Shown: one piece after another, positions 2,361 to 40,422 of the stretch
How the letters are laid out: every line of letters starts with the position of its first letter
Numbering within the stretch: position 1 is the first letter of the stretch
NCBI GenBank assembly: GCA_035084275.1
Contig: CM068757.1
Location: 9,610,001-9,674,000 of the forward strand
Direction: 5' to 3'
From: Hydrolagus colliei
Taxonomy: Eukaryota
DNA length: 64,000 nt
Made by a program: the position numbers and the translations under genes
Notes under the pieces: model-generated
What the model was told of the DNA's origin: nothing
The model's database searches: none
Seen by the model: only the letters and a program-made list of their open reading frames with translations

Positions 2361-2445
2361 TCAATTGTGTTCGTGGTGAGGGGGATGGGAGCGGGGGTGG
2401 ATTGATGGCCAGGACACGGGGAGATCTCCCTTCTCTTTTCGAATA

Positions 2446-5993: not shown

Positions 5994-6027
<34 letters not shown>

Positions 6028-10524: not shown

Positions 10525-10588
10525 AGCCAACAACAGCAGCTGGTTCAGAAGGGCAGTGACTGAACACTACCAGTAGATCAACAACAGG
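10525..10588 (+). CDS. Candidate stop-containing mini-exon (EPTTAAGSEGQ*), upstream paralog
   Basis: Pyrimidine tract ttgtttccatttcag|ag, TGA at 10557-10559 in phase 1, donor gg|gtaact. Confidence 0.35.
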
Positions 10589-16323: not shown

Positions 16324-16396
16324 ATGTCCTCACCCGGTGGAGCTGCCAGGGCGCTGACCCTCGTCCTGATCCTTGGGGCTTGGATTGCAGGATCAG
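16324..16396 (+). CDS. NCR3LG1: Leader (signal peptide) exon MSSPGGAARALTLVLILGAWIAGS
   Basis: 73 nt, hydrophobic core, phase-1 donor g|gtacag. An in-frame upstream ATG at 16297 is an alternative start. Confidence 0.85.
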
Positions 16397-19300
16397 GTAC
16401 AGAAAATGCGCAAACGTTAGACTGATTTGCTGCTGGATCCCACCGCTGAGCGAGACACAGAGACACACCGCTAACTGGAGGCTGCCCTGGGGGGGGGGGG
16501 GGGGGACACAGCCTGAAGGGTCTGTGTTTGGGGTTTAGCTGATAATATCAAATATCAAGGGCCTCTTGGATGGTAAACTGGCGGCCCACGGGCCGGATTC
16601 CTTTATCAATTTATTTGTTTTGAACGTTATAATTGGAAACAGCGACAAAATTTCTCTGGGCTGATGGTGATTCTCCCCAGCAAGTTATAAGGGGAAAAAC
16701 CAAGCCCTGTTTTGTGTGGGAGGCGAGGTCTTCAACTTAATGTTCAACAAGGACTCTCTTCAATCTGCACAAATTGTATTGTTGCTATGTGCTGTATATA
16801 ATATTAAGTTACAGTGAAGCACTGGGGCAGATACATTGGAAAAATTGAAGAGTCTCAGTTATGAGAACCAATAGCGCCCTTGAAGAAGGAACCATCTTGG
16901 CGCAATTAACAAGGGACAGTGAGGCTAGGGAAAAGAGAGTGACTGAAGGCGTGGTTGAATTGAAGGGTCTTGAAACTTGGCTTGATGGAGGCAAGGGAGT
17001 GAGCAAGGCAAAGGGAATGTGGGATGGAGTTATAAAGAGTGGGGGCAGAGAGGCTGAAGGATGGTGGAGCGTGCAGGGCGGAGGACACAAATGAGGCCAG
17101 AGCCTGCTGAGTGGAGGAGAAGACAGATCCAATTGGAGTTAGCACGTCTCAGACACAGGGAGGAGCAAAGCCGTGGAGGGCTTTGAAGGTGATGAAAAAA
17201 TTATTTTTAATTCTATAATCTGGGGAATGGGAGCCAGAGCTGCCAAGTCAGGGTGATAGGGTCAAGGATTCCGGTGTGGGAGAGAATACAAGCTGCAGGT
17301 TGTGAATGACTGGCTGCTTGAGGAGGGAAGAGTTGGGAAACCGATGAGCAGGAATTTGGAGTTGTCCAATCTAAATGTAAATAAATGCATGGATGAGGAA
17401 CTCAGTGGGTGGGGGGGGGGGAGAGTCAGGCGATTAGTACATGTAGGTAGGGTGCCATCGAGGGTGGAGGCAGAGAGATGGAGTTGGGTGTCATCTGCAT
17501 ACATTTGGAAGCTAACCCCGTGTAGATAACATCGTGGTGGGGTATGAGCAGCTTGGAGAGGTGGGGAGGGGCCAGGGCGGGAAGTGATTTGAAAGTGAGA
17601 AGGAGGATATTCTAATCAATCCATTCTGCAACAAGCAGCCAGTGAGGGCTTGCAGACACGGGAGTAATGGGGGTGCGGAGTCTCAAATACGTGAGGCACA
17701 GTCAGCAGAGTTTTGACACAAGCCTCAACCCCTCATTCTCTGGATAACCTGTGGGGTACAATTCTATAGGCACTAGCTGTGCTCCAGTGCTCTGCCTAAA
17801 TGGCCATTAATTGCAAATGCACATGAGCATGCTGTTTAACATTCACTCCTTGGTATTGTCACCAAACCCTTGGGTAGGACTAGATTTTCTTGTTTCAATA
17901 TTCTTGAAGCAGTAGCTCATCCCAACCTATGAATTTTAACGTGCTTCTAATCTCAGATAATCAAACCTGCTATTCTGGTGTTTAAAATGCTCAGTTGTCA
18001 TCAATGTTTTGGAATGCCCCTTGTTTTTACACAGATGCTTTGGCGATGACAATATTTAAAGACCCATTGGAGGTCTTATTGAATGAAGATGTTGTCCTTC
18101 AATGTAACGTAACCCTCAAGACTCCGGAGGAGCCCAGCCTTGAAATAATTGCAGTTCGGTGGTTTTGGGGGTTGAAGGAAGTGTATGCATACAATGGAGG
18201 GATATTTAAAGCTATCAGAAACGGATCAAAGATAATAGTAGAAAATCTGCAAAGGGGAGATGCCTCACTACATCTTCCTAAGGTTCAGATATCTGAAGCA
18301 GGAGTGTACAAGTGTATGGTTTACTTGATGCCGACCATATCACAAGAAGAAAAGAGTTCAACCTTAATAGTGTCAGGTAAGCACAGTAATCTTGCCGTGT
18401 GTGTTGTGTGTGTTGTGTTGCGGCTTGTAATGCTGTATTCAACAGATCACAAGATAAGTTGAGATGATTCGCCCACAAATATACAGTCAATTCACTTTAC
18501 AGTATATTCTGTGAAGCGCTTTGGGACATCGATAAGATGTGAAAAGTGCTGTATCAAATACAAGAATTATTATTATTATGAAGATGGCTGTTCAGACCAT
18601 CTGAGCTCAAGCATCCAGGAAACCCATCGTCACATCACTGCATCAAACTATTCCAGTGTGCTATCTTCAACCACCCTTCTGTAAGGGTCTGGTGCAATAG
18701 TCAGCAATGAACAGCACACATTAAAAATTAAATAACACAAGTTTATTGCTTGGTAATAAGGGAAGTAAATTAAATAAGGACACGGACAAAAAGGAATCAA
18801 TATAAACAAACTTATTCTCTAAAATTAGTAACTAACTCATCTATTCCGCATACACGTACTGCTCCCACCCCGCAGTGTATGGATGCGTGAGTGTGTGAAT
18901 ATACTACTGGGTTCTGGGTGTCTGTCAATAATAATAATCCTTAAGTTTATATAACACTTTCCACGACTAATTGTTGCCTCAAAGCGCTTCACAGAATACA
19001 CAACGTCCTAAGTTGGGACAGGAGCAGTGGGGGAAGGTTCGTGGTTGGGGGAAGGAAAGTAGGAAAATTAACCGCATTGACCGTTTGTGGGTGAAACGCG
19101 GCAGCCAAATTGCGCACAGCGGTGTCCCACAAACAGTCGTGGAAATGGAGCCAGGGGAGAAAGGGGGAAAAGAGGATAAGAGGGAGAGGGAGGCGAAGGT
19201 GGGGAATAGTCAGATAGGAAAAGGGGAGAGAAAGGTGGCAAGGGAGAGAGGGAGGGCAAGGTGGGTGGGGGGCAAAATCAGAGAGAAAGGGGGGCAAGAG

Positions 19301-22300
19301 GAAGAGGGAGAGAAGGGGAAAAGGGGGGAGAGAAAGTGGGGAAAGGGAGCAAGGGAAGAAGAAGGGGGGGGGGGGGGGGTAGGCCGGGGCAGGGGGGATT
19401 AAACAACAACAATAAACAACAAAATCAACAACAATAAACAACAAAAGCAATAATATTAATAACAAAAATAATAACCATCAAAAATAGTCCAGAAGCACCA
19501 CCTCAAGGTCCAGTTTCCCTCTGCTTGTAGATTTCCTTGACTCTTTGCTCTGCCCTGCTTGCCTTTTACTCAACTTCTGTATGTCTGTCTCTCTTGCCAA
19601 GCTGTGTTTTAGGTTCGTTGATTGGGCTGATATTCTGCTTGACAGTCAATCAAGGCTTCTCTCTTTCTCTGTCTCTCTCACTTTTGCCAGTTAACCCTTC
19701 ACTGCTATTATCCAGGCTGCAGTACCTGGACAATAACAATTGTCCTGGCTGATCACACAACAGCTGGACTCTCTCAGCAGCTAGTCTGACATTTGGTGTT
19801 GGCTGACCACAAACAACCAGACCTCCCTTCTTCTGACTGTTGGCTCACTGCTCCACTGTGCACTGTCCTCCTGCTAGCCTGACCTCTCACTCTCCTGCTG
19901 GTTCTCTTTCCTTCTTTTGATTGTTGAAATGATTGTTGGTTCTTGGTTGATTGTTGAAATGATTGTGCCTTTACCCCTCAAACCTTCCTATCTTTGTACC
20001 GTTTTTGCAGCATCAGGACAATAACCAGATTTCTCCTGTTAGAACTGGCCATGCACCCACAAGAATCTGTTTATTGATCTTTGTCCAAGTCATTCTCAAA
20101 CTCATTAAGTTTTAAAAAGAATGTGTATTCTTAATCATTGTCCCTTAGTACTCCATAAACCCTTGCACCTGACTAGGTCAGTTCAATCCACGACTGTTTG
20201 TGGGATACAGAGGGTTGGTGGATCGCTACTCGGGGCATTAATCCCATTACAAAAAGTTCTAATAATAATTTAGTGCTGAACACGTCTTATCAATGTCTCA
20301 AAGCTCTTCATAGAATATATTGTAAAGTGAATTGACTGTATATTTGTGGGCAAAATGCGGCAGCCAATTGCGCACAGCAGCGTCCCACAAACAGTCGTGG
20401 ATTGAAATGACCAATTTTTATTATTTTTTAATTGGTAATTTTGTCATTGGATTTGAGTTTCTACCTTGGATTATTTTACTAATTTCAACTTTAAACCTTT
20501 AACCTCTTGTTCTACCATCTTGGTGCATCATGTTTTACACATTTATGCACCATCTGAGAAATCGTCTCTCAAGACTGATGAGCCCTATCTCATTTTGGCT
20601 GAAAGTCCCAGTTAATAAACAACCCATCAGTCAGAGTGATTGTTATTAACCCCTCTGCTTAAGCAACCATTGATGCCATCTAAAATGGGTCAGATGAACT
20701 GGTAACCATGCATTGGTCTCCAACACACCTGTCCATTTCTATCTCGGTGAGATGCTTCATTTGGGGAAACACAGTTACCCCATTCTTCTGTTGACCTATA
20801 GTGATGTAAATTGTTTCGTTAACTTGCCAAGATTAGATGTATGTAGCTCACTGGTATTAGTTCATAAATCTTGGGGTTGAAATTCAAATTAGTCTTAATT
20901 CATATGGTATTGTTGTTGTTGTTTGTTGTTGTTGTTATGTTGTAAAATCTAAGTGTTGTGCAAAATTGTTCCATTGAATTAGAAAGCCATTACTTCTAAG
21001 AAGTGGGAATCATTGATTTTTTAAGGAATTTTTCTTAATTTTGTGCAATTCAAAGTTCCAGGGTAGACAAGGTGGAATTTCTGTCTGCCTGTTGCTGTGT
21101 CTGAAGTAAATACAAGTTGTATTATTATTCTCACGTGTGTGTATGTTGTGGGTAGGAAATAAAAGTGCTGCTTGAAAGACAATACTATATTCATGTAAAG
21201 AAATGTGATAACCTCTACAGCTCAGCCAAACGTCACCTTGTCTCCACATCGCATCAATGTAATCAATGGTTCAGTAGAAGACTTGATGTGTGATGTCAAT
21301 GGATTTTACCCTGAGATGCACAGCATCAGCTGGGTCAAGGTATCGCGTGGTGTGGAGACGGAGATTACAACAGATATCTTGACGCAAGATTTAGTTATCA
21401 ATGAGGACAAAACATTTAATCTTTCCAGCAAGTTGAAGATCAGACCAACCCTGGCTGTCGATGGTGATAAATACAGGTGTGTGGTGAAGCACAGAACATT
21501 CAGTGATAGTCTTACACTGGAGGCAGAGCTGACTGTGGGAATTGAGAATCCCCAGGATCCTGAAGGATATGGACCTGGAGCTGTTATTGGAGGTGTAATC
21601 GGTGTTGTCCTGATAGTGATTGTCGTCTTTGTTTTCGCGGCACTTTACTTTTGGAAGAAAACGAAACAAGGTAAGGATCTTCACAGCCCTAAACAACAAC
21701 GGCAGACGTGGGGGTGATTTATTATACACTAAATGGTCTTGTGCACATTTTCTATCAATAGAGAACAGTCAGCTGACACTTGATCAACTGAAATAGATAT
21801 TGTCCTAATGACAGTCAAAAAGTTTGTGTCGAGGCCTCTGCTCTCTGGGACATTTACCCGAATCTTTTCTAAAGACTTACCTGTTTGATCGTGCTTTTGG
21901 TCACTAGCAGCATTCCCTGCTTCCTCTTTGCACCTCACTCAGTGATCCACACTGTAAAGTCCTTGTAAAGTACTTTGAGATGACATCAAAAGATACTGCA
22001 TGAGGGCAAATTGTTGTTATAACTGAACTGTGTTGATCATTACCCAGGTTTCTTGAGAGAATTAGAATATTTGATGCTACTTTTTGTATGTTCCACAGCT
22101 CCTCCCAAGATCAATGAAATCAGCAAACCCACTCGCTTTATACATGGGCAGCGCGTCAATCTGAGTTGGGAAGTGACTCGTTTCAAACCAAAAGAGATAG
22201 AGATCATGATATTTCTGACGAGGAAAGGAAAACAGCCACTGGAGCTATTTGTCTGGAAATTCACAAAGAATAAAAACGAACCAGGTCAGGTTGAAGAAGG

Positions 22301-25300
22301 TTTTCATCTCCTGAAAACAAAAAATGGATCTGACGGGGATAATTCGTTCTCTGCTGACACCCCACAATGTGATCAGCTCGAAAATGGGACCTTCAGGGTA
22401 AAGTGTCACATATGGTTCTGTCCTGATGTATCTGAGGACGATGGAGCTCAAATAACAATGCAAGTTCATCACAAGGCTCTGAAACAGCCTCTCAAAAAAT
22501 CTGTAACTTTAGATGTTGAAGGTAAGATTTGCATTGTGCACCTCCCTACCTCCACCTAACCACACCCACATGTCAATGTGCAAACAATGGCAAGAAATAA
22601 AAACATGGAAATCCGGGGTATTGATCCTTTCTAATAATAAAAAAAAAAAATTTGGTCACTCAATCCAGAATTAGAGTGTGAAATTGGCTGACGGGTTACG
22701 CCCATAAAATATGCAGTCAATACACTTTACAGTGTATTCTGTTGAGTGCTTTGAGACGTCTCAACAGTGGGATAAGGCGCGATATCAAACACTAATTATT
22801 ATTATAATTAGAGGAAACAAGGTTATTCACCCCACCGAGCCTATGCCGGTGGTCACTCATCCACTGGAGCTATCTCCCCGTATCCCAATTCTCTACTCTT
22901 CCCCCTTACCCAATGATGAGCTGCTTCAAAACCACTGCAACATTGTTACTATGTGAGCTCCAAGAGTTACCTTATGCCCAGTAACCCTGTGTGGTCAGTT
23001 GACGGATTGACTCAGTTGGTGACGCTCTCTCCTATGGGACAAGGTCGTCAGTATTTCAATTGGCATCTGAAAACCTGCCCTTCACCTCAGGCTATATAGA
23101 AGCTACCATAATCTCTGTCACTCTTACTGTGTGTCACTCTCTCTTTCTTTCCCTCTCAGCTTCAGAGAGAGAAGAGAATAGATTGAGAGGGTAAACAAAA
23201 GGGGAGAGAGAAGAGAGAGAGACAGGGAGGGAGAAAGAAGAACACATAAAAACACAGACAGTTTGTGTTCATACAACTTTTATATTAACATGGAAGTTCT
23301 CAGACAATAATAGCCTTGCACATGACATATCACCTGATCATGCCTTTGAGACTTCACAGAATAAACTGTAAACAGAGGAATGTGGAGTAAGGAAACTTGC
23401 ACAATATTTCGCCTGCTGGAAATCGTACCCTGGTCTCTCGCTTATGAGCTACAGGACTCCACAGAATATACTGTAAAGCAGATTGATTGTGTAATTTGTG
23501 TGCGACGAGCAGCAGCCAATTGTGCACAGCAGTGTCACACAAATAGTCATGGATTAAGTGACCAATTTATTATTTTTTAATATTTTTGATGCAATTATTA
23601 TCCCTGAAATACAATCTGAGAATCTACTAATAACCAGGTTCCTACATACGGATGGGTAAACAGAGGCGTGTGGATTAAGGAAATTTAAGGCCCACCATTT
23701 CCAGGAATCAAACGAAATCTGAGATTGAAGTGCGAATGGAATCCAGGGGGTCAATGTGAGCCCCTAGATTGATTTTATGATTTGTAACTGGACACAGTGT
23801 GGCCAGTTGTAGAATTACAGCATAATGTTAATAATGTTTGTGGAGTCCTGTAGCTCAGTGGTTAGAGCACTCGCCTTACAAGCGAAGGACTTGTGTTCAA
23901 TTCAAGCATGGTGAAACCTTGGGCAAGTTTCCTTGCTCCACATGCCTGATAATAATCCCTCAAAAAGAAAATTGGTCATTTTAATCCACAATTGTTTGTG
24001 GGGCACTGCTGTGCGCAATTGGCTGCCGCAATTCACCCACAGTTAATTCACTTCACAGTATATTATGTGCAGTGCTTTGAGATGTCTTGAAGACGTGAGA
24101 AGCGCTATATAAAACACAAGGATTATTAGTAATAACATGTTACTTGTGTTTACAGCTCCTCCCACGATGACTGAAATCAACATACCCTCTGGTATTGTGC
24201 ACGGTGCCAATGTGCCTTTGACATGGGAGGTTAATGGCTTCAACCCACGGGCCATTGTAATTGCTGTATTGGTGAAGAGGAAAGTGGATCAGGAAGCAAA
24301 GCAACTGTTTCATTGGCAGATCCCAGAGAAAGAAAAGCAGCCAATCCCACATGATATTACCCCCAGCATTGATACACAAGTTAACTCCTTCACTGCTGAG
24401 GTGGCAACGATTGTAAAGACAGATAAAGGGACTTTCAGTGTGAAGTGCAGCGTTGCCATGTGTGCTGATGTAATCAGGGATAATGATGCTGAATTCACTG
24501 TTGAAGTTAAACATCAGGCTGTGGATAATCCTCTCACTAAAGCTATAACATTATGTGTCGCAGGTAAACTCTACCTCTGTATTTTCTCGCTCTCTCTGGT
24601 GCTAATATGTGAGTTGAAGTGCAGCATGCTGCTGTGTGTGTCCCTCTATGCTGCAATAGTTATTTTTGTTTGTGACAGTGACGTTCTATCACATAGACAT
24701 CTGTGCCGACAGCCACCCCCCTTCCCCTCTCTATCCAGGCTCAGTGGATGACTCTGTCACTTTAAATCGCTCAAACACATTAGCTGAAGTGAACAATGCC
24801 ATATTAATGCATGTTGTTGCTGTTGTGTTTGGGGGCAGCTCTGTTGCAGGTTGATGGGGAGGTGATGGGCTCTGTGGTAACGGTCCAGCTCAACATCAGC
24901 CTGAAATCTCATCTGTTTTCTTGAGAAACTTAAACAAATCGATTTTGAGATCCTCAGACTTGCCTACAATTCACCTCTTGCTCTCACACCTCGCTACCTC
25001 TCCAATCTGCAAACACCCACTTCTCAACCCACTCCGTTCGCTTGCTCAAACCTTTGGCATCTTCCTTGACCTGTCCACTATACTATCGGCAGCCAGGCAT
25101 TCAACAACGATACCCTGAACCTCTGAAACTGCCTTCCCCAAACTCCAGCTCGCCCTCCATCTCCATCAATCGTTGGATTACACATGGAGGTTCTACTCTC
25201 TGACCATGCCTACCATCACCTCCCCTCTCTCCCCAGCTCAGTATCAAACTACAATATTGCGAAGCTCATCAAGACGTTACCCTGCATGAAAGTTGCTATA

Positions 25301-31300: not shown

Positions 31301-34300
31301 NNNNNNNNNNNNNNNNNNCCTCTCTCCCTCTCTCTCTCCCAGGCTGACGGCCTGCCTCTCTCCCTCTCTCCCTCCCTGGCTGCCTGGCTGCCTGCCTCTC
31401 TCTCTCTCTCCCTAACTCCCTTCTGTCGACAATATCATTGAAAATGCTTCCGTTTTTTTTCACCAAGAAAAGGTCAAAAACGAGGGGTGCGCCTTATACG
31501 CGGGTGCGCCTTATACGCGGAGATATACGGTATATTCTGTGAAGAGCTTTGAGATGTCTAGAAGACATTAGAAGCACTGTATCAAATGCATTATTATTAT
31601 AAGTCACGTCACAGTCAGATGTTCAATGGGGATTTATTATTTTGTACATGGTGGTAAATAATCTGGTGATTTCTAGGAAATATTTAATATTAAAACACGA
31701 TATCTTACACCATTATATGTGCATAACTATGGGTGTCAGCTCTGAGCATGTTATCCTGTTGTCCCTTGTCCAGAAGGTTGTGGGTTCACATCATATCAGG
31801 ACCTGAACTTCCAGTCTAGTGCAGAGACTTGTAATAAGGAAATGAGTGGATCATATCTTATAAGGAATTTAATTGTTGATGGTTTCAATTTCAAATGACA
31901 GTTTCCTTTATTGTAGACTTTCTCAAGTCAATGGATATACTAGTACTAGGCAGTACAGTATCTAGATAAAGTAGTGCCTAACTCAGGAGAAGCAACCGTG
32001 ATCAGTTACCCATCGCTTGGGAGAACTCAGGCATTCTCTTACTTATCAGTTTATTTTCCTCGTCTCCCTCTCTCTCCCTCTCTCACTCTCCCACGTTAGC
32101 AGTCCATACTTATATGCAGCCTGTTTCAGGAATGTCTCATCGTTAACCCCAAACGTTCCAAGTTTGTTCCCAGGTGCAAGGTACATAACTGAAGTTATAA
32201 ACACCCGTACATTAAGTTTGCTCATCTTGCTCATTATGCACTTGATGTACCAAGAAACAATATCTGTGAGATCAGTCAGCTTTTTAAGATTGGGGATTTG
32301 AACAAAATCAACAGTATCTGTGAGTTGAATTAGATTGTGTCTCCTGAAAGTTGTTTTCTCACACTCAACTTTCAGTTAATCTTTACCCAAGATTACGCCT
32401 TGTACGAGAATCAAACCTGACACAAGTGCTCTAACCACTGCCCTACAGGACTAAAACAATCTTGAATTTTGGTGTAGATCCATATCATGTCTAGAGGACT
32501 ATCTCAAAGTGCCTCACAAGATTCAAAGTGAAATGGAGTAACTGTATCAGTAGACAAATGTGGCTTCACGATAGCACACAGCAATGTCTCACAAACAGTG
32601 ATGGAGTGAGTGATCAATTGTATTTGGGTATTTGATGGCCAAAACACCAGAAGAACTTTGTTCGCTTTTTGAGTAATGCCACATGTGCTTTAATGTCCAC
32701 CGGAAGAGGCAGGTGGTACTTCGGATTAACATCCATTCGTGGGATGTATCTTTGCAGCTGGGAAGGAACAGCCTTAATATTGTCAACACATTGTGTAGAG
32801 GATATAAAGACTTCAAGTAACATATTACAGTGTGAACGTTTTACAGGATGATGGTGCAGTTGTGTCTGGGGGCAGCTCTGTTGCAGGTTGATGGGGAGGG
32901 GATGGGGTTCTGTGGTCAGGGTGTAGAAATATCACTGTAGAAATATCGAGGTGAAGAATGGCTTTATTCACAGCTTCACACTCACATGGTCAAAGGAGGT
33001 TTATTATATTGTACACAGTAAATAATTGGTGATTTCTGACAAGAATGTAATATTATAATATTAAAACCATTATATATGCATGTACTGTATATGGGTGTGA
33101 GCTCAGAGCATGTAGCATCTCTTGTCAGAAGGTTGTGGGATCGCATCACATCAGGACCTGAACTTACAGTCTGGCATGACACTGTGCAGTGTGTGCTGGG
33201 GGAGGCCTGTAATCCTGGAGATGCCGTCTTTTGGTTGAGGTATTGAACCGTTGTCCCGTCTGCCTGTTCAGCTAAACGTTAAAATTCCCACAGAATGATC
33301 AAAAAGAGACGGGAGTTTCTCCCATTTTCTTGGCCTCTATATATCTCCAACTGTGTGTGCGTCTCTCTCTTTATGTCTCTCTATCTCTACATCTCTCGTT
33401 ATCTCGCTCATTCCCTCTTTCGCTCTTGTTTTCTCTTGTATTTATTTGGGGAAAAATTTAGAACTTTATTATTCATTTGAATAATGAAATTATTAAATTA
33501 TTAATTTGTTGAAAGGCCAGTGTTCACTCTGTCTGAGGGCAGCTATTGTATGTTACTGGAGGCTCAGACAGCGTGTGTGGTAATGATATAGTTTAACATC
33601 ACTCTACACCTCCAGCCTGGTGCCCTCTGCCATGACATGCAGGCTTTTCACTTGTTTCTGTGGATTTTGTTTCTAGTTTGTTTCTGACACAGACATAGGC
33701 TAGAAATGTGGTTGTCTATATCACACAGGTGTATCCCACAAATATTCCCCGATTGAGTGACCAGATTATTATATTTGTTGAGCTATTATGTCCTGCAGAG
33801 AGTGATTGGCCAATCCACGAACCATCTAACATCTGCTTACTGCTGGGTAAACAGAAGCATGTGGAATAAGGAAATTTTTGCCCTGTAGAAGAATCTACCC
33901 TGAGGTTAGATTGAGAGGCGAGTGCTCTAACCAATATGCTACAGGACTCCAATGATAAACGTTGCATTGTGGTACAGCTCCTTATGATGTCTTCATTAGA
34001 TTCACTGTGAAATGGAGTAACTGTGTATTTGTAGGCAAATATGGCAGCACAATTGATAATGTCTCACAAGCAGCCATGCTGATAATGTCTCACAAGCAGC
34101 CATGCTGATAATGTCTCACAAGCAGTGGTCAATTGTATTTGTGGTGGGGGGGATGGGAGGGGGGGTGGATTGATGGCCAGGACACGGGGAGATCTCCCTT
34201 CTCTTTTCGAATACAGGTAGTGCCCACTTAACGAAGGGGTTGGGGACTTCGAAACTCCTCGTTAAGCGAAAATTTCATTAGGCGGGAGGGAGTTCGCTAC

Positions 34301-34767
34301 TGTGTTTCTGTACATGAAGAAAATCAGTTTCGTTCCCAGTAATGCCTTGCGCGTAGCCTAGCGCCCAGCGCTACTAATTGCGGTGTACCAACGATGCCAT
34401 AAGGTAGGTAGAACTGCTATTGAAGGCTGCTATTGAAGAGAGAGACTGTGAGTGAGATTGTGACAGTGAGAGACTCAGAGAGAGAGAAAGAGAGAGAGAG
34501 AAAGAGAAAGAGAGAGAGAGACTGGGACGGAGAAAGAAATAGAGAGGGAGAGAGAGAGAGAGCGACCGAGACAGACAGAGGGAGAGAAAGAGACACAGAG
34601 AGAGAGACTGGGTAAGAGAGAGAAATAGAGAGAGATAGAGAGAGAGAGACTGAAACAAACAGAGAGAAGGAGATACAAAGAGAGAGACTGGGACAGAGAG
34701 AGAAATAGAGAGAGACAGACAGTGCAACCGAGACAGACAGAGAGAAAGAGATACAGAGAGAGAGACT

Positions 34768-34798
<31 letters not shown>

Positions 34799-37700
34799 CG
34801 TGATCGAGACAGACGGAGAGACAGAAAGAGACCAGGGAGAGAGACCGGGACAGAGAGAGAAATAGAGAGAGAGAGAGCGCATGACCGAGACAGACAGAGA
34901 GAGAGAGAGAAAGGGACACAGAGAGAGAAAGAGACACAGAGGGAGACTGAGACAGAGAGAGAGAGACTGAGAAAGAGAGAGAGAGGGAGAAACAGACAGA
35001 CAGAGAGAGAGAATGTACCTTGTATCGCTTTTGGAAACGATCAAGCCGCCCGCTGCTAGCAGCAAAAGTCTCCGCTGGCTTTTTCACAGTAGCTTCATAT
35101 AGTTGCCTAGCATCCTGCCGCTTAACCTCCTCTCATACTGCACTGCTTTGTCTTGGATTAGGTGGCATGCTGAACTAAGTGTGTGTATGTATGTAGCTTC
35201 CTCGACTGAGACTGCGCTTGTGTTGCGGAGGCTGCCGGGAGACGAGAAGCGCGTGCAATTTAAACTTTCTTTATAGCGAGCGCAGCCTTCGCTAAGCGCA
35301 TGGGGGGGTACAAATAGAAACCATCTTTATAGTGAAGCTTCATTAACAGGGCGTGTGTTAAGCGGGGGCTGCCTGTAGTGACACAGGATTCCTTAACATC
35401 CACCTGTGGAGGCAGATAGGACTTTGGTTTAAAATCTCATCTGTGGGACGTGTCTGTCGTGGGAAGGAACAGCCTCAATACTGTCAGCACATCGTGCATG
35501 TATTGTAAAGACTAGTGTAAAGAGTAACAGTGTGAATATTTTACAGGATGTGTAGTTGTGCCTGGGGGCAGCTCTGTTGCAGGTTGATGGGGAAGTGATG
35601 GGCTCTGTGGTCAGGGTCCAGCTTAACACCAGCCTGCAACATCGTCTGCTGTCCTCAGCAATAGTGTGCAGCTCTGGATGTCTGAAGCTTTGCTGCAGAT
35701 TTAGATTGTAAATTGTGTGTGAAGCAATGTGTGAGGCAGTGTCGTGTGTCCTGTAGCTGGAATATAATCTTGACATGCTGCTTGTGATTTTTTTATAGAC
35801 TCTCCCACAATTACTGAAGTCAATATACCCTCTGATATTAAACACGGAGCCCAAACCACTCTGAGCTGGTCAGTGACTGGGTTCAATCCACAGTCCATTG
35901 GAATTGCTGTATTGCTGAAGAGAGAAGGGGAGCAGAACGCACGGCAGCTGTTTTGTTGGCAGACAACAGAGAAAACACAAGCAGAAAGAAAGAAGTCAGT
36001 GAAGATTCCTGTTACCTCTCACGTTAACGATGTCTCTATCACTTCGAAGGAGGCAACGATTGAACGGGAGACAACTGGGAATTTCAGTGTGAAGTGCAGC
36101 CTTACCATGGTTGCTGATATATTCCGGGACAATGGTGCCGAGTTCATTATTCATGTTGAACATCAGACTATTCTTGGGAAACCTCTCATCAAATCTGTAC
36201 CACTGCATGTTAAAGGGGGTAAGTGCTGCCTCTGTCTGGTCTCCTATCTCTCCCTCACACATCACTGTAGAAATATTGAGGTGAAGAGTGGCTTTATTCA
36301 CGACTCCACACTCACATGGTCAAAGGGGATTTATTATATTTTACGCAGTAAATAATTGGTGATTTCTGACAAATATGTAATATTATAATATAATATTGAA
36401 ACCATTGTATAGTCATAAATATGGGTATGAGCTCAGTGCATGTAGCATCTCTTGTCAGAATGTTGTGGGATCGCATCACATCAGGACCTGAACTTACAGT
36501 CTGGCATGACACTGTGCAGTGTGTGCTGGGGGAGGCCTGTAATCCTGGAGGTGCCGTCTTTTGGTTGAGGTGTTGAACCGCTGTCCCGCCTGCCTGTTCA
36601 GCTAAACGTTAAAATTCCTACAGCACGATCAAAAAGAGAAGGGATTTTCTCCCATTGTCTTGGCCTCTATATATATCTCTCTGGCTGTGTGCGCGAATCT
36701 CTCTCTTTATGTCTCTCTATCGCTATATCTCTCATTATCTCGCTCACTCCCTCTTTCCCTCTTCTTTTCTCTTGTATTTATTTTGGGAAAAATTTAGAAC
36801 TTTATTATTCATTTGAATAATTAAATTATTAAATTATTCATTTGTTGAAAGGCCAGTGTTCACCCTGTCTGAGGGCAACTATTGTATGTTACTGGAGGCT
36901 CAGACAGGCTGTGTGCTAATGATATAGTTTAACATCACTCTACAGCTCCAGCCTGGTGCCCTCTGCCATGACATGCAGGCTTTTCACTTGTTTCTGTGGA
37001 TTTTGTTTCTCGTTTGTGTCTGACACAGACATAGGCTGGAAATGTGGCTGTCTATAGCACACAGGTGTATCCCACAAATATTCCCGGATTGAGTGACCAG
37101 ATTATTTGTTGAGCTATTATGTCCTGCAGAGAGTGATTGGCCAATCCACGAACCATCTAACATCTGCTTACTGCTGGGTAAACAGAAGCATGTGGAATAA
37201 GGAAATTTTTGCCCTGTAGAAGAATCTACCCTGAGGTTAGATTGAGAGGCGAGTGCTCTAGCATGTGGATTAGGTGTTGAGCCTTTCAGACCAGAAGCCC
37301 CAAGTTTCAAGCGCTGGTCTGGTAGCTGATCTGAGCTGTATGGGACAGAAGCTGTGCTGCTCCATTTGGTTTCTGGGACCCTATGTGTGAAGAGTCTGAC
37401 GTCGTTCACAATCTGGACTGAAATGTGAGAAACCCAGTGATTAAGGGAGAAAATTATTAAAGCTCATCTTACGATCAGCAACGTAGATATCTCTCACCTT
37501 TCAGATATTGGGCAGATCAGATATGATAATAATAACTTGCATTTGCGTATAATGCCTTATATCTGAAGGATGGCTTAAAGTTCTTAATTTAGTGTGAAAT
37601 GGATTGATTGATTGTGTATTTGAAGCCATACTCGGCAGCACAATTGCATACAGCAAAGTCCCACAAACATTCATGGAATGAGTGAGCAATTTTATTCGGT

Positions 37701-40422
37701 GTAATAATTATAGACCAAGACATCAGGAGGATTCCCTTCTCTCTTCGAATATTCCTGTGAGATCTTTAACATCCACTTGAACACGCGGACGGGACCTCGG
37801 TTTAACATCTCATCCAAAGGATGTTTCGCTGCAGCTGGGAGGGAACAGCTTTAATCCTATCAACACATTTTACAGAGAATATAAAGATTTTGAGCAAATT
37901 ATACAGGACAGAATTACTATAGCGTGCTGTGCTTATGTATCAGCCTGGCCCAGTTGGTAGCACTCTTGTCTCTCTGTGTCAGAAGGTAATGGTTGACCCT
38001 CTCAGTGCAGTGCTGCTGCAATGTTTACAACATGTTTCCATTTGATAATTCCTGCTTAAAAAATACCCAGGGTGTGTCTGTGAGACCATAGTGTCCTGTT
38101 ACTATATATGTCACTCCGGGGACATATAGGATGTTTCAAAAGTCTTTACTGGGGTGATTCTGAGCCCGTGCTTTGAGGGATGTGACAGCTGAGAACGAAA
38201 GGGGGGCAGATGAGATTGAAAATAAAGGTCTAAAAGGCAAATCCACATGATCGTAATCTCTCATTTATCGTGTTTTCTCTCATTTATTAACAAATTCACA
38301 GAATGGCAGGGACAGGATTCACATTGAAGCCACCCCAGAACATCAGAGATCAGTCCTCTGGTCTATCGTTTAATCTTTTTTGCTAATTCGATAAATAACA
38401 TAGATAAAAAGTTTGAGAGAAAAAACTTTAAAATTCTTAATTGTCTTTTACACAGCTGTGAAACTGAAGATATAGGATGTTTTATATAAAGTTAAAAATT
38501 GAATGATACAGAGCAACAAACAGAAGCTTCAGTGTATATTTGTGCATGTGTTAAAGTCGGAAGAGAGAGTGTGTATGTGAGTGAGGGAGAGTGTGTTTAT
38601 AGACAAGCGAGAGATCGTGAAGGAGCCTGGGAATGAAACAAAGAGTAAGAGAGTGAATGGAAGAGAGAGCTCAGGCGGGAAGAGATAGAAGGAGTGACAT
38701 AGAGAGGTACTGTTTCACGCAGATAATAACTGTATCGATAAAACACACGTATTGCTAGTCAGAGTTGGGAAGTCACAGAGAGAATGGAAATGAGAGTTAA
38801 AGAGTGAATGAAAGAGAGAATGGGGAGGGAGGGCTAGAGAGAGTAATCAAAGTGCATCTCTTGAGTGGTATTGTCGATATCTCTCCTTTCGGATATGGGG
38901 CAGATCAGATCTCTGTAGCTGGGAAGCTCTCCCCACCACTAACTCAGACTCACCCATAATATCTGCCATCCGGCTACCTCCCTCTTCCCCTTCTCTCTTA
39001 TTCAGGGTTGTACCCCATCCCTGAAAGCACTTTGGAGGTATTTACCTGTGTGAAGGACACATTAATCATGTTAATTTATTGTTGTTCAATTTTGAGTATA
39101 TTAATATTGTTTTCTCAATATTAATCCTTTCTGAATAACTTTCTCGCAAATTGTTTCCATTTCAGAGCCAACAACAGCAGCTGGTTCAGAAGGGCAGTGA
39201 CTGAACACTACCAGTAGATCAACAACAGGGTAACTAGCTATGTCACTTGCTGTCTTCCAGTTCTCTCCAGTCACTTTGTTAATTAAAATAAACTTTATTG
39301 ATAAAATTAAGAGCTATGATGATGTGTTTGGGGATTAGAATGTGTTGTTTGGGTGATTAATATTTAGGAAATTCCTTTGCTTTAGATGGTGCAAATAATC
39401 GGTCTCCCAGGTACCAGACACGTGGTATCCCAAGAAAGCATGATGGCCAGTCTAACTTCTCGTCACACAAATACTGAGTGTTCGCTACAGCCACTGTCAT
39501 CATCTCAGCTTTCGATTCTGACAACCACAATGTGAATATTGATCAGCTTTGTCAATCGCTGAACAGCGATTAGTAATGTGTCAATTTTTCAGAAATATAA
39601 AGAATCTCTGAAATGGTAATTTGTTAAGACCTAAGGCTTAAAGTGGCGATGCTCTGCTTGTATCTCTTGATTAAGACGCTCGCATATTAATTTTGTTTTT
39701 GACTAAGGTGCTTCGGTTGGATGTTTCCCAGATTCCCGCTCTGAGTCAGTCAAATGATTCCCAAACCATAATACCTGTGAAGTGGGCACAGTGCTGTCCA
39801 GGGACATGCTGCCGGGTTGTCGGCGGATCTGGCTTTGTGACTGTGGCTTCCTTTCAATCCTGAGCATAAATTGGATCAACTTCCACATATATGCTTGGGA
39901 CGTCCTCCTGATGAGAAAGGCACTCTATAAATGTAATTGTGTTGTTGTTGTTTTGTTGTGACTGCACTGCACTCTCCTGGTTTGTGTCCTACATAACTAA
40001 CAGCCATCACTTGTCTCTGCAAATTATTTTTCCTATTGTCACCTGTGACGTACACCAAGGTTTCATCTTTGGTCCCCTACTTTTCTTTGTATATATGCTC
40101 TGCAGAGATTGGATCAACTTCCACATGTATGTTACTTCTCCTCCAGCTGCAACTCCAGGTCCACCAGTGTATGCAGGTTGCTGCTGTTTAATCCATAAAG
40201 CCATGGGTTTTGACAGCATGTGTGGTTTAGTGGCTTGACCTGGATTCATTTCTTGAAACAGTGGGCCCTTTTGTGTCATGTTATTTAGATGAGATATTAA
40301 ACCCTCTTTGTACTTGTGCAGATGGCAAGAAGTTGGCTACAATGCTGTATTTTACTGTCATCTTGACTGGTGTTTTATTATTATGTATTATTATTGTATT
40401 ATTATGTAGTACTATTACGTAA
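16324..40422 (+). CDS. NCR3LG1: Complete B7-H6/NCR3LG1-like gene model: leader-V-C1/TM-7 x intracellular C1-like-(TM2). Join 16324-16396, 18035-18376, 21221-21670, 22099-22521, 24156-24563, 25447-25860, 26847-27269, 28807-29238, 30412-30822, 35799-36218, 40322-40422 = 3897 nt, 1298 aa
   Basis: All introns are GT-AG and phase 1. All internal exons have lengths divisible by 3 and open frames. V and C1 carry B7-H6 signature motifs as I recall them from the human protein. The choice of last exon is uncertain (alternatives 39166 or 49633). Confidence 0.75.
16810..17700 (-). mobile_element. Degenerate L2 fragments in intron 1 (also 47340-48230)
   Basis: MYADDTQLHLS and L2 3' tail remnants. Confidence 0.7.
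18035..18376 (+). CDS. NCR3LG1: Ig V-set exon, B7-H6-like
   Basis: acacag|at ... g|gtaagc, 342 nt; LNEDVVLQCNV, AVRW, GDASLHLPKVQISEAGVYKC motifs match B7-H6 V. Confidence 0.9.
21221..21670 (+). CDS. NCR3LG1: Ig C1-set plus transmembrane exon, B7-H6-like
   Basis: ctacag|ct ... g|gtaagg, 450 nt; MCDVNGFYPE, ISW, NEDKTFNLSSKLK, YRCVVKH; TM AVIGGVIGVVLIVIVVFVFAALYFW followed by KKTKQ. Confidence 0.9.
22099..22521 (+). CDS. Post-TM C1-like domain D1 (type B)
   Basis: ccacag|ct ... g|gtaaga, 423 nt; APPKI...LSWEVTRFKP...PQCDQLENGTFRVKC...DDGAQITMQVHH. Confidence 0.85.
23842..24135 (+). mobile_element. tRNA-derived SINE with L2-like tail (another at about 61926-62210; many fragments elsewhere)
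   Basis: A box TAGCTCAGTGG, B box GTTCAATTC, tail gcgctatataaa...attatt. Confidence 0.75.
24156..24563 (+). CDS. Post-TM C1-like domain D2
   Basis: ttacag|ct ... g|gtaaac, 408 nt; APPTM...LTWEVNGFNP...GTFSVKC...DAEFTVEVKH. Confidence 0.85.
25447..25860 (+). CDS. Post-TM C1-like domain D3 (type A)
   Basis: ttatag|ct ... g|gtaagt, 414 nt; APPII...LSWSVIRFNP...GTFIVNC...DDGAEFTVEVQH. Confidence 0.85.
26847..27269 (+). CDS. Post-TM C1-like domain D4 (type B)
   Basis: ttgtag|tt ... g|gtaggt, 423 nt; VPPKI...LQWAVTGFTPGK...PKCEHDNKEGTFRVNC...DDGAELIVQVQH. Confidence 0.85.
28807..29238 (+). CDS. Post-TM C1-like domain D5 (type B)
   Basis: tgatag|ct ... g|gtaggt, 432 nt; keeps the B-strand Cys (VTCVVTGFTP) but lacks the F-strand Cys (NGAELSVEVHH). 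Confidence 0.85.
29462..29760 (+). mobile_element. Deu-domain SINE (SacSINE1-like); fragments recur in each cassette
   Basis: tRNA-like head plus ggtgccgtcctttaaatgagatgttaaac...gatcccatagcgctatt core, recognised from memory of DeuSINE consensus. Confidence 0.55.
30412..30822 (+). CDS. Post-TM C1-like domain D6 (type A)
   Basis: tttatag|ct ... g|gtaagt, 411 nt; ASPTI...LKWSVTGFHP...GNFRVNC...DDGAEFIVKVKH. Confidence 0.85.
30956..31530 (-). mobile_element. Truncated copy of the same Tc2-type MITE
   Basis: Reverse complement of 1162-1620; one TIR ends at 31530, followed by TA. Confidence 0.75.
34214..35375 (-). mobile_element. Tigger-like element, duplicated copy
   Basis: Same TIRs and insertion site as 5581. 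Confidence 0.75.
35799..36218 (+). CDS. Post-TM C1-like domain D7 (type A)
   Basis: tttatag|ac ... g|gtaagt, 420 nt; near-identical to the exons at 88, 3839 and 7158. Confidence 0.85.
39166..39229 (+). CDS. Candidate stop-containing mini-exon (EPTTAAGSEGQ*)
   Basis: Duplicate of 10525-10588; TGA at 39198-39200. Confidence 0.35.
40322..40422 (+). CDS. Candidate terminal TM2 exon
   Basis: Duplicate of 11681-11781; gtgcag|at acceptor; closes the reading frame after D7. Confidence 0.5.

What the first reader, a model, noticed from the sequence alone, without database searches (positions are those of the whole stretch)
16324..40422. B7-H6-like ligand with a ~980-aa intracellular array of seven Ig C1-like domains
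Seen: after a normal B7-H6-type leader-V-C1-TM-KKTKQ, seven further symmetric phase-1 exons each encode an open 136-144 aa C1-derived domain with intact splice sites. Established: B7-family proteins normally have short tails, and human B7-H6 has a Gag-derived tail rather than Ig domains. Inference: the array is cytosolic, forming a possible scaffold, reverse-signalling or pathogen-sensing module on an NKp30-ligand homolog. I cannot check whether this architecture has been reported in other non-mammalian NCR3LG1-like proteins.
Basis: partly seen in the sequence, partly recalled or inferred. Interest (0 to 1): 0.9.

Follow-up and report, generated by a model that had tools for sequence, protein, structure and literature searches.

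The report
B7-H6-like gene with Ig-repeat tail
This is an intact cartilaginous-fish gene for a B7-H6-type immune ligand in which seven antibody-like domains follow the membrane anchor; public gene models show the same layout for this gene across non-mammalian vertebrates, and I found no paper that studies it.

Summary
They give leader-V-C1-TM-KKTKQ, then seven open exons of 136-144 aa. The N gap lies in a CT-rich repeat inside the D6-D7 intron and breaks no exon, but it could hide further repeat exons.

- **Ectodomain:** its best solved relative is human B7-H6.
- **D domains:** they model confidently as Ig sandwiches. They are homologous to the gene's own C1 domain (hhalign 97.5%), carry a central insertion, and have lost the canonical disulfide.
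- **Orthology:** the gene matches Callorhinchus LOC103173843 exon by exon for D1-D5.
- **Spread:** the V-C1-TM-Ig-array layout recurs in public gene models of sharks, rays, chimaera, bichirs, coelacanth, lungfish, amphibians, turtles, squamates and crocodilians. Many of these are named NCR3LG1.

So the layout is the non-mammalian norm, not a one-off. I found no paper describing it.

A cytosolic position for the array is well supported but not proven. There is one TM, basic residues follow it, no homologue has a later TM, and N-glycosylation sequons (N-x-S/T) are not enriched behind the TM.

D1-D5 evolve at dN/dS of about 1.2 yet stay open. The function is unknown; a cytosolic scaffold or sensor rod is my best guess.

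The parts
16324..16396 (+). Leader exon (MSSPGGAARALTLVLILGAWIAGS), ends in phase 1
   Evidence: ATG at 16324 and GT donor after 16396. The leader resembles that of Callorhinchus P0004.
18035..18376 (+). IgV exon, 114 aa, phase 1-1
   Evidence: AG/GT borders. Pfam V-set. Aligns to the human B7-H6 V domain. dN/dS 0.35 against the Callorhinchus ortholog.
21221..21670 (+). Single exon encoding Ig C1, stalk, TM (AVIGGVIGVVLIVIVVFVFAALYFW) and KKTKQ; donor AAG|GTAAGG in phase 1
   Evidence: Pfam C1-set 1.8e-13. Kyte-Doolittle TM at residues 259-277. Borders.
22099..22521 (+). D1 exon, 141 aa, membrane-proximal Ig-like domain
   Evidence: Open, AG/GT, phase 1-1. Ortholog of Callorhinchus LOC103173843 d1, support 100/97. 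The 428-bp intron before it holds no leader-like ORF.
24156..24563 (+). D2 exon, 136 aa
   Evidence: Ortholog of Callorhinchus d2, 76% aa, support 100/99.
25447..25860 (+). D3 exon, 138 aa
   Evidence: Groups with Callorhinchus d3 and with window D6 and D7.
26847..27269 (+). D4 exon, 141 aa
   Evidence: Ortholog of Callorhinchus d4, support 99/94.
28807..29238 (+). D5 exon, 144 aa; the only D that keeps the B-strand Cys
   Evidence: Ortholog of Callorhinchus d5, support 100/98. Partial Pfam C1-set hit at 19.7 bits, below the 21-bit cut-off.
30412..30822 (+). D6 exon, 137 aa (D3-type duplicate)
   Evidence: AlphaFold2 model with pLDDT 90.2. Pairs with D7 in the tree.
31150..31318 (.). Assembly gap inside the D6-D7 intron
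   Evidence: N run. Both flanks are CT-rich simple repeat. No exon is touched. Hidden extra exons cannot be excluded.
35799..36218 (+). D7 exon, 140 aa
   Evidence: It is 92-98% identical in DNA to three upstream copies.
39166..39200 (+). Probable true terminal exon (EPTTAAGSEGQ plus stop), phase-1 acceptor; ATTAAA at 39282
   Evidence: Aligns with the annotated terminal exon of Callorhinchus LOC103173843 and its flanks. This is inferred from synteny, not from transcripts.
40322..40422 (+).
   Evidence: AT-rich low-complexity sequence. None of 65 homologues has a hydrophobic segment after the array.
88..7577 (+). Tail of the upstream paralog: three intact D7-like exons (88-504, 3839-4255, 7158-7577)
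   Evidence: tblastn. Open, AG/GT, phase 1-1.
10525..10559 (+). Terminal-exon copy of the upstream paralog
   Evidence: Same sequence as 39166-39200, inside the 98% duplication.
61387..61719 (+). IgV exon of the next paralog downstream (58% aa identity to the V exon)
   Evidence: tblastn and translation.

Best explanation
The region is one intact gene of a tandem cluster in a chimaera-like cartilaginous fish. It encodes a type I membrane protein of the NCR3LG1 (B7-H6) family.

**Protein layout.** A signal peptide, an IgV domain and an Ig C1 domain face outwards; by homology they are the ligand part for an NKp30-type receptor. One TM helix follows, then KKTKQ. Behind the membrane lie at least seven tandem Ig-like domains (D1-D7, about 977 aa) and a short hydrophilic end.

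**What the D domain is.** It is a C1-set derivative with a central insertion of about 35-45 residues. The B-strand Cys is replaced by Trp and the F-strand Cys by Val, so it cannot form the canonical disulfide. That fits folding in the reducing cytosol.

**How the array arose.** D-only arrays came from amplification of the membrane-proximal domain of an older, pan-gnathostome NCR3LG1 form. That older form carries one D domain followed by ordinary C1-set domains.

**Variable length.** Because all exons are phase 1-1, repeat number can change by exon duplication and by exon skipping.

**Inferred function, not shown.** The array is a rod roughly 25-30 nm long (assuming about 4 nm per domain) that acts as a cytosolic docking or sensing platform. 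It would couple the surface ligand to intracellular partners: control of surface display, anchoring, or reverse signalling. Its fast evolution suggests that the partners change quickly.
For: **Shown**
- Exon structure, phases and open frames.
- Ectodomain is V-set plus C1-set, with human B7-H6 as best solved relative.
- One TM lies before the array, and none after it once the doubtful last exon is dropped.
- The 428-bp intron between the TM exon and D1 has no ATG-plus-signal ORF. The TM exon has a near-consensus phase-1 donor that matches the D1 acceptor.
- Callorhinchus has the same tandem layout with short introns of a few hundred bp between the TM exon and the first D exon.
- A Callorhinchus UniProt fragment, P0011, reads FWKKWNQ|APPKITEIH straight across the junction.
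- RefSeq LOC103173843 (1309 aa) is collinear with D1-D5, and each pairing is strongly supported in the tree.
- Of 90 database representatives with a full D domain, 65 have a TM 60 aa or less upstream, usually starting at residue 230-280. None has a later TM.
- The D fold is an Ig sandwich and is homologous to C1, with Cys to Trp and Cys to Val replacements.
- N-glycosylation sequons (N-x-S/T) are enriched in ectodomains (observed/expected 1.76) but not behind the TM (1.13), over 83 proteins.
- ORF integrity cannot be chance: P = 2e-6, and 11 of 11 exon indels are in frame.
- The same layout is annotated as NCR3LG1 in crocodilians, turtles, squamates and amphibians. The post-TM domains of alligator, coelacanth and elephant-shark members pass Pfam C1-set.

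**From my own knowledge**
- UniProt V9K7L7 (P0170, 1079 aa, V-C1-TM-D-C1n) comes from the elephant-shark transcriptome.
- In support, it differs at several residues from the genome-derived RefSeq model, and no genomic contig encodes it exactly.
Against: - I could see no transcript of the window species. A search with the C1TM+D1 junction found only the Callorhinchus fragment.
- One RNA-like Logan contig from a newt relative has the D and C1 exons spliced together. Its 5' end, however, is not the TM exon, and its first ATG lies inside D.
- Frog RefSeq isoforms lacking only the 34-37 aa TM cassette exist. In the wider family the array could therefore also be secreted.
- Post-TM domains of bony vertebrates keep the canonical Cys pair, which is unusual for cytosolic Ig domains.
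- D1-D5 have dN/dS 1.17 (95% CI 0.90-1.55), and their DNA divergence is about equal to that of introns. Constraint on the residues themselves is weak.
- The proposed function rests on analogy only.
Confidence: 0.7

Rival explanations
1. There are two transcription units. One is a short-tailed B7-H6-like gene (leader-V-C1-TM, ending by read-through as KKTKQGKDLHSPKQQRQTWG). The other is a separate downstream gene for a leaderless, soluble cytosolic chain of D domains. Gene predictors fuse the two because the phases happen to match.
For: - Read-through after the TM exon reaches a stop after 15 codons.
- The Logan contig L003 has non-TM sequence upstream of its first D exon, and its first ATG lies inside D.
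- Several database entries begin inside D arrays, for example P0013, P0015, P0016 and P0018.
- No transcript data exist for this species.
Against: - The intron is only 428 bp, and a few hundred bp in Callorhinchus. It has no usable ATG or first-exon ORF.
- The TM exon has a strong phase-1 donor.
- D1 has no start codon of its own in a good position.
- In 65 of 90 representatives from many lineages and pipelines, TM and D are joined.
- P0011 and V9K7L7 read through the junction.
- Entries that start inside D look like fragments.
Confidence: 0.12
2. The D array is extracellular or luminal in the main product. This could happen by skipping the C1+TM exon (leader-V-D1..., all phases fit), by use of a cryptic donor inside the TM, or by an IGSF1-like processing route. 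The protein would then be a long secreted or surface Ig chain.
For: - All exons are phase 1-1, so any exon can be skipped in frame.
- RefSeq predicts TM-less isoforms in Bombina and Rana.
- C1-set domains are otherwise extracellular.
- Bony-vertebrate arrays keep the Cys pair.
- The window array carries 8 sequons.
- IGSF1 has Ig arrays on both sides of a hydrophobic linker (plus my own knowledge).
Against: - In the window and in Callorhinchus, C1 and TM share one exon, so the TM cannot be dropped alone.
- No second hydrophobic segment or internal signal follows the TM.
- The window D domains lack the disulfide pair.
- Sequon counts behind the TM are at chance level: 8 seen against 6.3 expected here, and 1.13 family-wide.
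- Shark members carry acidic, Ser-rich linkers and tails between D domains, which is typical of cytosolic segments.
Confidence: 0.08
3. The D exons are decaying, functionless duplicates that drift neutrally behind a working V-C1-TM gene.
For: - dN/dS for D1-D5 is 1.17, not different from 1.
- Exon DNA divergence (0.12-0.21) is about equal to intron divergence (0.18-0.22).
- Amino-acid differences fall about equally in strands (33%) and loops (38%).
- Copy number differs between paralogs and between species.
Against: - Ten of ten D exons in the window are open with intact splice sites, and so are the orthologous and paralogous D exons found by tblastn in the Callorhinchus loci.
- P(no stop by chance) is 2e-6, and 11 of 11 exon indels are in frame.
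- Positional orthology of D1-D5 is retained.
- The domain is recognisable from chimaeras to alligators, with invariant core residues.
Confidence: 0.04

Closest known systems
Human B7-H6 / NCR3LG1 (PDB 3PV6, 4ZSO, 6YJP)
   Same: Signal peptide, IgV plus Ig C1 ectodomain and a single TM. It is the best solved-structure match of the window ectodomain (8e-26).
   Different: By my own knowledge of the literature, the human tail is about 190 aa, Gag-related, and has no Ig domains. The window protein has about 977 aa of Ig-like domains behind the TM. Pfam finds nothing Gag-like in them.
RefSeq gene models: Callorhinchus LOC103173843 (XP_042197504.1), LOC121850342, LOC103174897; shark 'uncharacterized' models (Carcharodon LOC121283378, Heterodontus XP_067902348.1); 'NCR3LG1' of Alligator, Gavialis, turtles, geckos, snakes, axolotl and frogs
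   Same: The same V-C1-TM-D... layout. LOC103173843 is the exon-by-exon ortholog for C1TM and D1-D5.
   Different: - Bony-vertebrate and 'long-form' chondrichthyan members have one D followed by ordinary C1-set domains that keep the Cys pair.
- The window gene and its chimaera and shark relatives have arrays made only of D, without the Cys pair.
- The distal repeats are lineage-specific: D3-type in the window, D4-type in Callorhinchus.
- These are computer predictions without described function.
Butyrophilins (e.g. BTN3A1, BTN2A1)
   Same: A B7-related V-C ectodomain, a TM and a folded intracellular domain. This is the best functional analogy for inside-out control of an immune ligand (my own knowledge).
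   Different: Their intracellular domain is B30.2/PRY-SPRY, not Ig. No SPRY match was found here.
Chicken BG genes
   Same: B7/butyrophilin-like MHC-linked multigene family. The long cytoplasmic tail is built from many short repeated in-phase exons, and its length varies by duplication and splicing (my own knowledge).
   Different: BG tails are heptad-repeat coiled coils encoded by 21-nt exons, not Ig domains.
IGSF1
   Same: Ig-domain arrays on both sides of an internal hydrophobic linker. It is a warning that position after a hydrophobic stretch does not by itself prove a cytosolic location (plus my own knowledge).
   Different: The IGSF1 linker is processed so that both arrays are luminal, and a true TM follows the second array. 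Here no further hydrophobic segment follows.
UrIg2 of sharks (V-J plus nine C1 domains, then TM)
   Same: A cartilaginous-fish gene with many C1 exons amplified in tandem and homogenised. It appears among the PDB hits for the C1 domain (9dmx).
   Different: In UrIg2 the whole C1 array precedes the TM and is extracellular.
Cytosolic Ig-repeat rods (titin, obscurin, filamin)
   Same: Tandem disulfide-free Ig-type sandwiches that work as rods and docking platforms in the cytosol (my own knowledge).
   Different: Those are I-set or filamin-type domains in soluble cytoskeletal proteins. They are not C1-set derivatives attached to an immune-ligand ectodomain.

Membership tests
B7 family, NCR3LG1 (B7-H6) branch | Signal peptide followed by one IgV and one Ig C1-type domain | tested here: met
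   Pfam V-set (33 bits) and C1-set (51 bits) on residues 25-288. Leader.
B7 family, NCR3LG1 (B7-H6) branch | Closer to B7-H6 than to other B7 members | tested here: met
   phmmer against PDB gives B7-H6 8e-26 and CD276 4e-19. Proteins sharing the D tail are named NCR3LG1 by RefSeq in reptiles and amphibians. I built no formal B7-family tree.
B7 family, NCR3LG1 (B7-H6) branch | Single-pass type I membrane topology | tested here: met
   One Kyte-Doolittle TM at residues 259-277, followed by KKTKQ. This is a prediction only.
B7 family, NCR3LG1 (B7-H6) branch | Binds NKp30 (NCR3) | not testable with these tools
   No binding assay is possible, and no NKp30-like gene lies in the window.
B7 family, NCR3LG1 (B7-H6) branch | Gag-related cytoplasmic tail (a feature of the human protein) | tested here: not met
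   No Gag-like Pfam match in D1-D6. This is a mammalian trait rather than a family-defining one.
Immunoglobulin C1-set domain (for D1-D7) | Passes the Pfam C1-set (PF07654) gathering score | tested here: not met
   Best is D5 at 19.7 bits against the 21-bit cut-off, over part of the domain only. D4 is weak (13 bits, E 0.14) and D1, D2, D3 and D6 have no C1-set hit; D7 was not scanned.
Immunoglobulin C1-set domain (for D1-D7) | Profile-level homology to bona fide C1 domains | tested here: met
   hhalign of the D profile against the ectodomain C1 profile gives 97.5%, E 7e-12, end to end with one central insertion. The D HMM weakly hits C1 domains.
Immunoglobulin C1-set domain (for D1-D7) | Ig beta-sandwich fold | tested here: met
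   AlphaFold2 pLDDT 90.2, pTM 0.85. Foldseek against PDB returns only Ig folds, E about 1e-4, TM 0.5-0.64.
Immunoglobulin C1-set domain (for D1-D7) | Canonical B-strand Cys to F-strand Cys disulfide | tested here: not met
   The B-strand position is Trp in 6 of 7 domains (Cys in D5). The F-strand position is Val in all 7.
Butyrophilin-like (B7-type ectodomain plus intracellular B30.2) | PRY/SPRY (B30.2) domain behind the TM | tested here: not met
   No SPRY or PRY hit in Pfam scans of the D domains.
IGSF1-like processed two-array proteins | A second hydrophobic segment or internal signal after the first, and a true TM after the second array | tested here: not met
   Only KKTKQ separates the TM from D1. 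None of 65 homologues has a later hydrophobic segment. The only such segment in the window lies in the doubtful last exon.
Pan-gnathostome 'long-tail NCR3LG1' gene models | A D-type domain starting 60 aa or less after the TM that follows V-C1 | tested here: met
   In the window D1 starts 6 residues after the TM segment. The same holds in 65 of 90 representatives. D1-D5 are orthologous to Callorhinchus LOC103173843.

The most novel reading that the evidence does not exclude
The intracellular Ig array is a fast-evolving cytosolic sensor or decoy. It binds host stress factors or pathogen proteins and thereby sets how much NKp30 ligand reaches the cell surface. This would be an inside-out switch analogous to the butyrophilin B30.2 domain, built from C1-set immunoglobulin domains working inside the cell. 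Mammals would then have lost an ancestral sensing module of B7-H6. The evidence that leaves this open: dN/dS is about 1.2 with strictly preserved reading frames, repeat numbers are lineage-specific, and the array is conserved from chimaeras to crocodilians.
Probability: 0.12. Interest if true: 0.9.

Novelty: new variant of a known kind. Interest (0 to 1): 0.62.

Why it matters
C1-set immunoglobulin domains are regarded as hallmarks of the extracellular machinery of adaptive immunity: antibodies, T-cell receptors, MHC, tapasin and B7-H6. Here a chain of C1-derived domains sits behind the membrane anchor of the NKp30-ligand homologue.

Public gene models show that this is the usual form of the gene in cartilaginous fish, lobe-finned fish, bichirs, amphibians and reptiles. 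No bird or mammal appeared among the 57 hits listed. If the array is cytosolic, three consequences follow.
- The ancestral B7-H6 had a large intracellular module that mammals replaced.
- That would re-open the question of how expression and signalling of this stress ligand are controlled.
- It would also give a rare case of C1-type Ig domains adapted to the cytosol, with loss of the disulfide in chimaeras and sharks.

The claim can be tested directly with cDNA, topology assays and interaction screens. The limits are real. The sequences are already in databases, the function is unknown, and my literature search could not reach the key 2012 and 2015 B7H6 evolution papers.

Tried and rejected
- **Pfam on single D domains** gave nothing above threshold. 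Homology had to come from profile-profile comparison and a structure model.
- **Literature.** Eight full-text searches for B7H6/NCR3LG1 with shark, elasmobranch, cartilaginous, Xenopus, alligator or cytoplasmic tail, and for phrases such as 'cytoplasmic Ig domains', found no description of this tail.
- **Key papers not reachable.** The Flajnik 2012 paper and the Ohta and Flajnik 2015 review are not held. I cannot exclude that they mention the tail.
- **Spliced transcript of the window species.** A search with C1TM+D1 found only a Callorhinchus fragment.
- **Logan contig L003** looked like transcript proof. Its 5' end is not the TM exon, so it decides nothing about the TM-D junction.
- **V9K7L7** could not be traced to a contig.
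- **Hidden leader exon** between the TM exon and D1: none.
- **Positive selection on the young D7 copies.** U3 against D7 shows 9 nonsynonymous and 1 synonymous change, and the exon is 97.6% identical against 99.6% for the neighbouring intron. The counts are too small, and the 11-kb duplication averages 98.3%, so I make no claim.
- **Substitutions concentrated in loops?** No: 33% in strands against 38% in loops, P = 0.18.

Full report
**Observation.** The window has two N runs, 2687-2830 and 31150-31318.
- a leader exon (16324-16396)
- a V exon (18035-18376)
- one exon holding C1, stalk, TM and KKTKQ (21221-21670)
- seven further exons of 408-432 nt (D1 22099-22521, D2 24156-24563, D3 25447-25860, D4 26847-27269, D5 28807-29238, D6 30412-30822, D7 35799-36218)

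All internal exons have AG/GT borders and lengths divisible by three, so each starts and ends in phase 1.

**The gap.** The N run at 31150-31318 lies in the intron between D6 and D7. Both flanks are CT-rich simple repeat. No exon or reading frame crosses it. What it leaves open is the number of repeat exons between D6 and D7.

**Surroundings.** The gene is one unit of a head-to-tail cluster.
- Three more intact D7-like exons lie upstream, at 88-504, 3839-4255 and 7158-7577. They are the tail of the preceding paralog.
- An 11-kb block, 4298-15232, is repeated at 32931-43875 with 98.3% identity.
- Downstream there are three copies of the leader exon (44335, 46904, 56542) and the V exon of the next paralog at 61387-61719.
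- Transposon remains lie between them.

**What the parts are.**
- *Ectodomain.* It scores as V-set plus C1-set in Pfam. Its best solved relative is human B7-H6/NCR3LG1 at 8e-26, ahead of CD276 at 4e-19.
- *D domains in Pfam.* None passes a Pfam threshold; D5 reaches 19.7 bits for C1-set against a 21-bit cut-off.
- *D fold.* An alignment of 19 D domains gave an AlphaFold2 model with pLDDT 90.2 and pTM 0.85, all beta. Foldseek returned only Ig folds.
- *D homology.* Profile-profile comparison of D with the family's ectodomain C1 gave 97.5% probability, E 7e-12. The match runs end to end, with one central insertion in D.
- *Lost disulfide.* The B-strand Cys is replaced by Trp and the F-strand Cys by Val. 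In the window the B position is Trp in six of seven domains and the F position is Val in all seven.

D is therefore a C1 derivative that cannot make the canonical disulfide.

**Relatives.** A search with the whole model found RefSeq models with the same V-C1-TM-D array in Carcharodon, Cetorhinus, Mustelus, Callorhinchus and the lungfish.

A profile search of 1.84 billion representatives found 317 proteins, 44 of them below 1e-30. Of the 158 retrieved proteins analysed (both searches together), 90 have a full-length D. In 65 of those a strong hydrophobic segment lies 60 aa or less upstream, usually starting at residue 230-280. None of the 65 has a later hydrophobic segment.

The names show horn shark, rays, chimaera, coelacanth, lungfish, reedfish and bichir, caecilian, newts and frogs, mostly as 'uncharacterized protein'. 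In Alligator the protein is named NCR3LG1.

A search with the alligator tail then found 57 proteins of about 750-1200 aa. Many are named NCR3LG1, from crocodilians, turtles, geckos, lizards, snakes, axolotl and frogs. No bird or mammal is among them. In alligator, coelacanth and an elephant-shark member the post-TM domains pass Pfam C1-set, with 5-6 stretches.

The layout is thus the normal one for this gene outside mammals. I found no paper that describes it, but the two most relevant papers are not in the library.

**Orthology and origin.** The Callorhinchus locus of LOC103173843 is collinear with the window.
- V, C1TM and D1-D5 match one to one at 59-76% amino-acid identity.
- Introns can be aligned at about 79%.
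- Synonymous divergence is about 0.18.

The source is therefore a fairly close relative of the elephant shark, probably another chimaera.

In a tree of D domains, each of D1, D2, D4 and D5 pairs with its Callorhinchus counterpart with strong support, and D3 groups with Callorhinchus d3. D6 and D7 are window-lineage duplicates of the D3 type. Callorhinchus instead amplified a D4-type exon three times.

All D domains of the D-only genes of chimaeras and sharks form one supported clade (97/97). It sits next to the membrane-proximal domain of the long-form genes from chondrichthyans to alligator. The D-only array therefore arose by amplifying the first post-TM domain.

**One gene or two.** Several points favour one gene.
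- The TM exon ends in a near-consensus donor (AAG|GTAAGG) in phase 1, and D1 begins in phase 1.
- The intron is 428 bp and contains no ATG followed by a signal-like ORF.
- The same tight spacing is seen in two Callorhinchus genes.
- A Callorhinchus UniProt fragment reads straight across the junction, FWKKWNQ|APPKITEIH.
- UniProt V9K7L7 (1079 aa, V-C1-TM-D-C1n) is, to my knowledge, transcript-derived. It differs at several residues from the genome model and is on no genomic contig in the collection.

Against this, I have no transcript of the window species. One RNA-like Logan contig has the array exons spliced together, but its 5' end is not the TM exon.

**Which side of the membrane.** A signal peptide, a single TM and basic residues after it put the array in the cytosol. 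Four further results support this.
- No homologue has a second hydrophobic segment.
- N-glycosylation sequons (N-x-S/T) are enriched in ectodomains (observed/expected 1.76) and at chance behind the TM (1.13), over 83 proteins. The window has 5 against 1.5 expected outside, and 8 against 6.3 expected behind the TM.
- The Ig disulfide is lost in the D-only arrays.
- Shark members have acidic Ser-rich linkers between D domains.

There are caveats. Frog RefSeq isoforms differ only by a 34-37 aa cassette that holds the TM, so a secreted form with the array outside is possible in the family. Bony-vertebrate arrays also keep the Cys pair. In the window and in Callorhinchus, C1 and TM share one exon, so the TM cannot be skipped alone.

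**The end of the gene.** It lies in AT-rich low-complexity sequence and has no counterpart in any homologue.

The annotated Callorhinchus terminal exon encodes (G)ESASRQTQHSGRFK and lies 945 bp after the last D exon. It and its flanks align to window 39166-39200. That stretch has a phase-1 acceptor, encodes EPTTAAGSEGQ plus stop, and is followed by ATTAAA at 39282. I therefore prefer a product of 1276 aa. This step is inferred from synteny.

**Rate of evolution.** Against the Callorhinchus ortholog:
- the V exon has dN/dS 0.35 (CI 0.19-0.59)
- the C1TM exon has 0.84
- D1-D5 together have 1.17 (CI 0.90-1.55), with dS 0.18

Exon DNA divergence (0.12-0.21) is about that of introns (0.18-0.22). 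Amino-acid changes fall about equally in strands and loops.

Yet random substitutions at the observed numbers would keep all five exons open with P = 2e-6, and all 11 exon indels are in frame. The reading frame and a small set of core residues are kept, while most other positions change freely or are driven to change. I cannot tell relaxed constraint from diversifying selection with two species.

**Mechanism.**
- *Shown:* gene structure, domain identity, orthology and family spread.
- *Inferred with good support:* one transcript, and a cytosolic array.
- *Inferred by analogy only:* seven or more disulfide-free Ig sandwiches would form a rod of roughly 25-30 nm (assuming about 4 nm per domain) under the membrane. 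That is suited to docking partners, much as butyrophilin B30.2 domains sense cytosolic ligands and filamin or titin Ig repeats act as platforms. Repeat number can vary by exon duplication and in-frame skipping, as the many RefSeq isoforms of shark genes suggest.

**Verdict.** The two main corrections are that the last exon is probably wrong, and that the architecture is the widespread ancestral form of NCR3LG1 rather than a rarity. It is already present, unnamed or named NCR3LG1, in many annotated genomes. It remains, as far as I could find, undescribed and unexplained.

Noticed in passing
window 88-504, 3839-4255, 7158-7577 (+): Three intact D7-like exons (91-98% DNA identity to D7) form the tail of the upstream paralog. 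Repeat number therefore differs between neighbouring gene copies: at least 3 there against 1 visible here.
   Followed up: partly
window 4298-15232 and 32931-43875: An 11-kb segmental duplication at 98.3% identity. It covers a D7-type exon, the probable terminal exon and the intergenic region up to the next leader.
   Followed up: partly
window 44335, 46904, 56542 (+); 61387-61719 (+): Three further copies of the leader exon: one identical, one with a 12-nt deletion, one with a single silent change. They are followed by the V exon of the next paralog (58% aa identity). Which leader that gene uses is unclear.
   Followed up: partly
window 57364-57981 (-), 45109-46081 (+), 59386-60323 (-), 15152-15853 (+), 52274-53275 (+): Transposon remains lie between the gene copies. 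One ORF has a reverse-transcriptase hit (RVT_1, 5.5e-11). Related ORF fragments occur elsewhere. A 333-aa ORF has a weak DUF4371 (transposase-associated) hit.
   Followed up: partly
window 2687-2830: The second assembly gap sits in the same kind of CT-rich simple repeat as 34461-34770 in the duplicated unit.
   Followed up: no
window 21671-21718: Reading through the donor of the TM exon gives KKTKQGKDLHSPKQQRQTWG plus stop. Intron retention could therefore produce a short-tailed isoform.
   Followed up: no
window D1-D5 against L002 (Callorhinchus): The post-TM array evolves much faster at the protein level (dN/dS 1.17) than the receptor-facing V domain (0.35). That is the reverse of what is usual for immune ligands.
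   Followed up: partly
P0256/P0036 (Bombina NCR3LG1 X1/X2), P0257/P0061 (Rana X1/X2): Frog RefSeq isoforms differ only by a 34-37 aa cassette containing the TM. They predict both membrane-bound and secreted forms of the same Ig chain.
   Followed up: yes
L003 (Logan SRR10305542 contig, 3507 nt): An RNA-like contig from a newt relative carries a 778-aa ORF of D plus C1 domains spliced together. The sequence upstream of its first D exon is not the TM exon, so it may be an unspliced intron or an alternative 5' exon.
   Followed up: partly
P0019 (Dendropsophus, 2158 aa): A frog protein with a different V-C1-C1 ectodomain, followed by a TM-like hydrophobic stretch and a long chain of C1-like domains (16 matched stretches in all). 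Post-TM Ig chains may therefore not be confined to the NCR3LG1 branch.
   Followed up: no
L001 and L002 (Callorhinchus MU249848.1, about 5.67-5.75 Mb): At least five genes of this type lie head to tail on one elephant-shark scaffold. The RefSeq model of LOC103173843 omits a V exon that is present at L002 8477-8827.
   Followed up: partly
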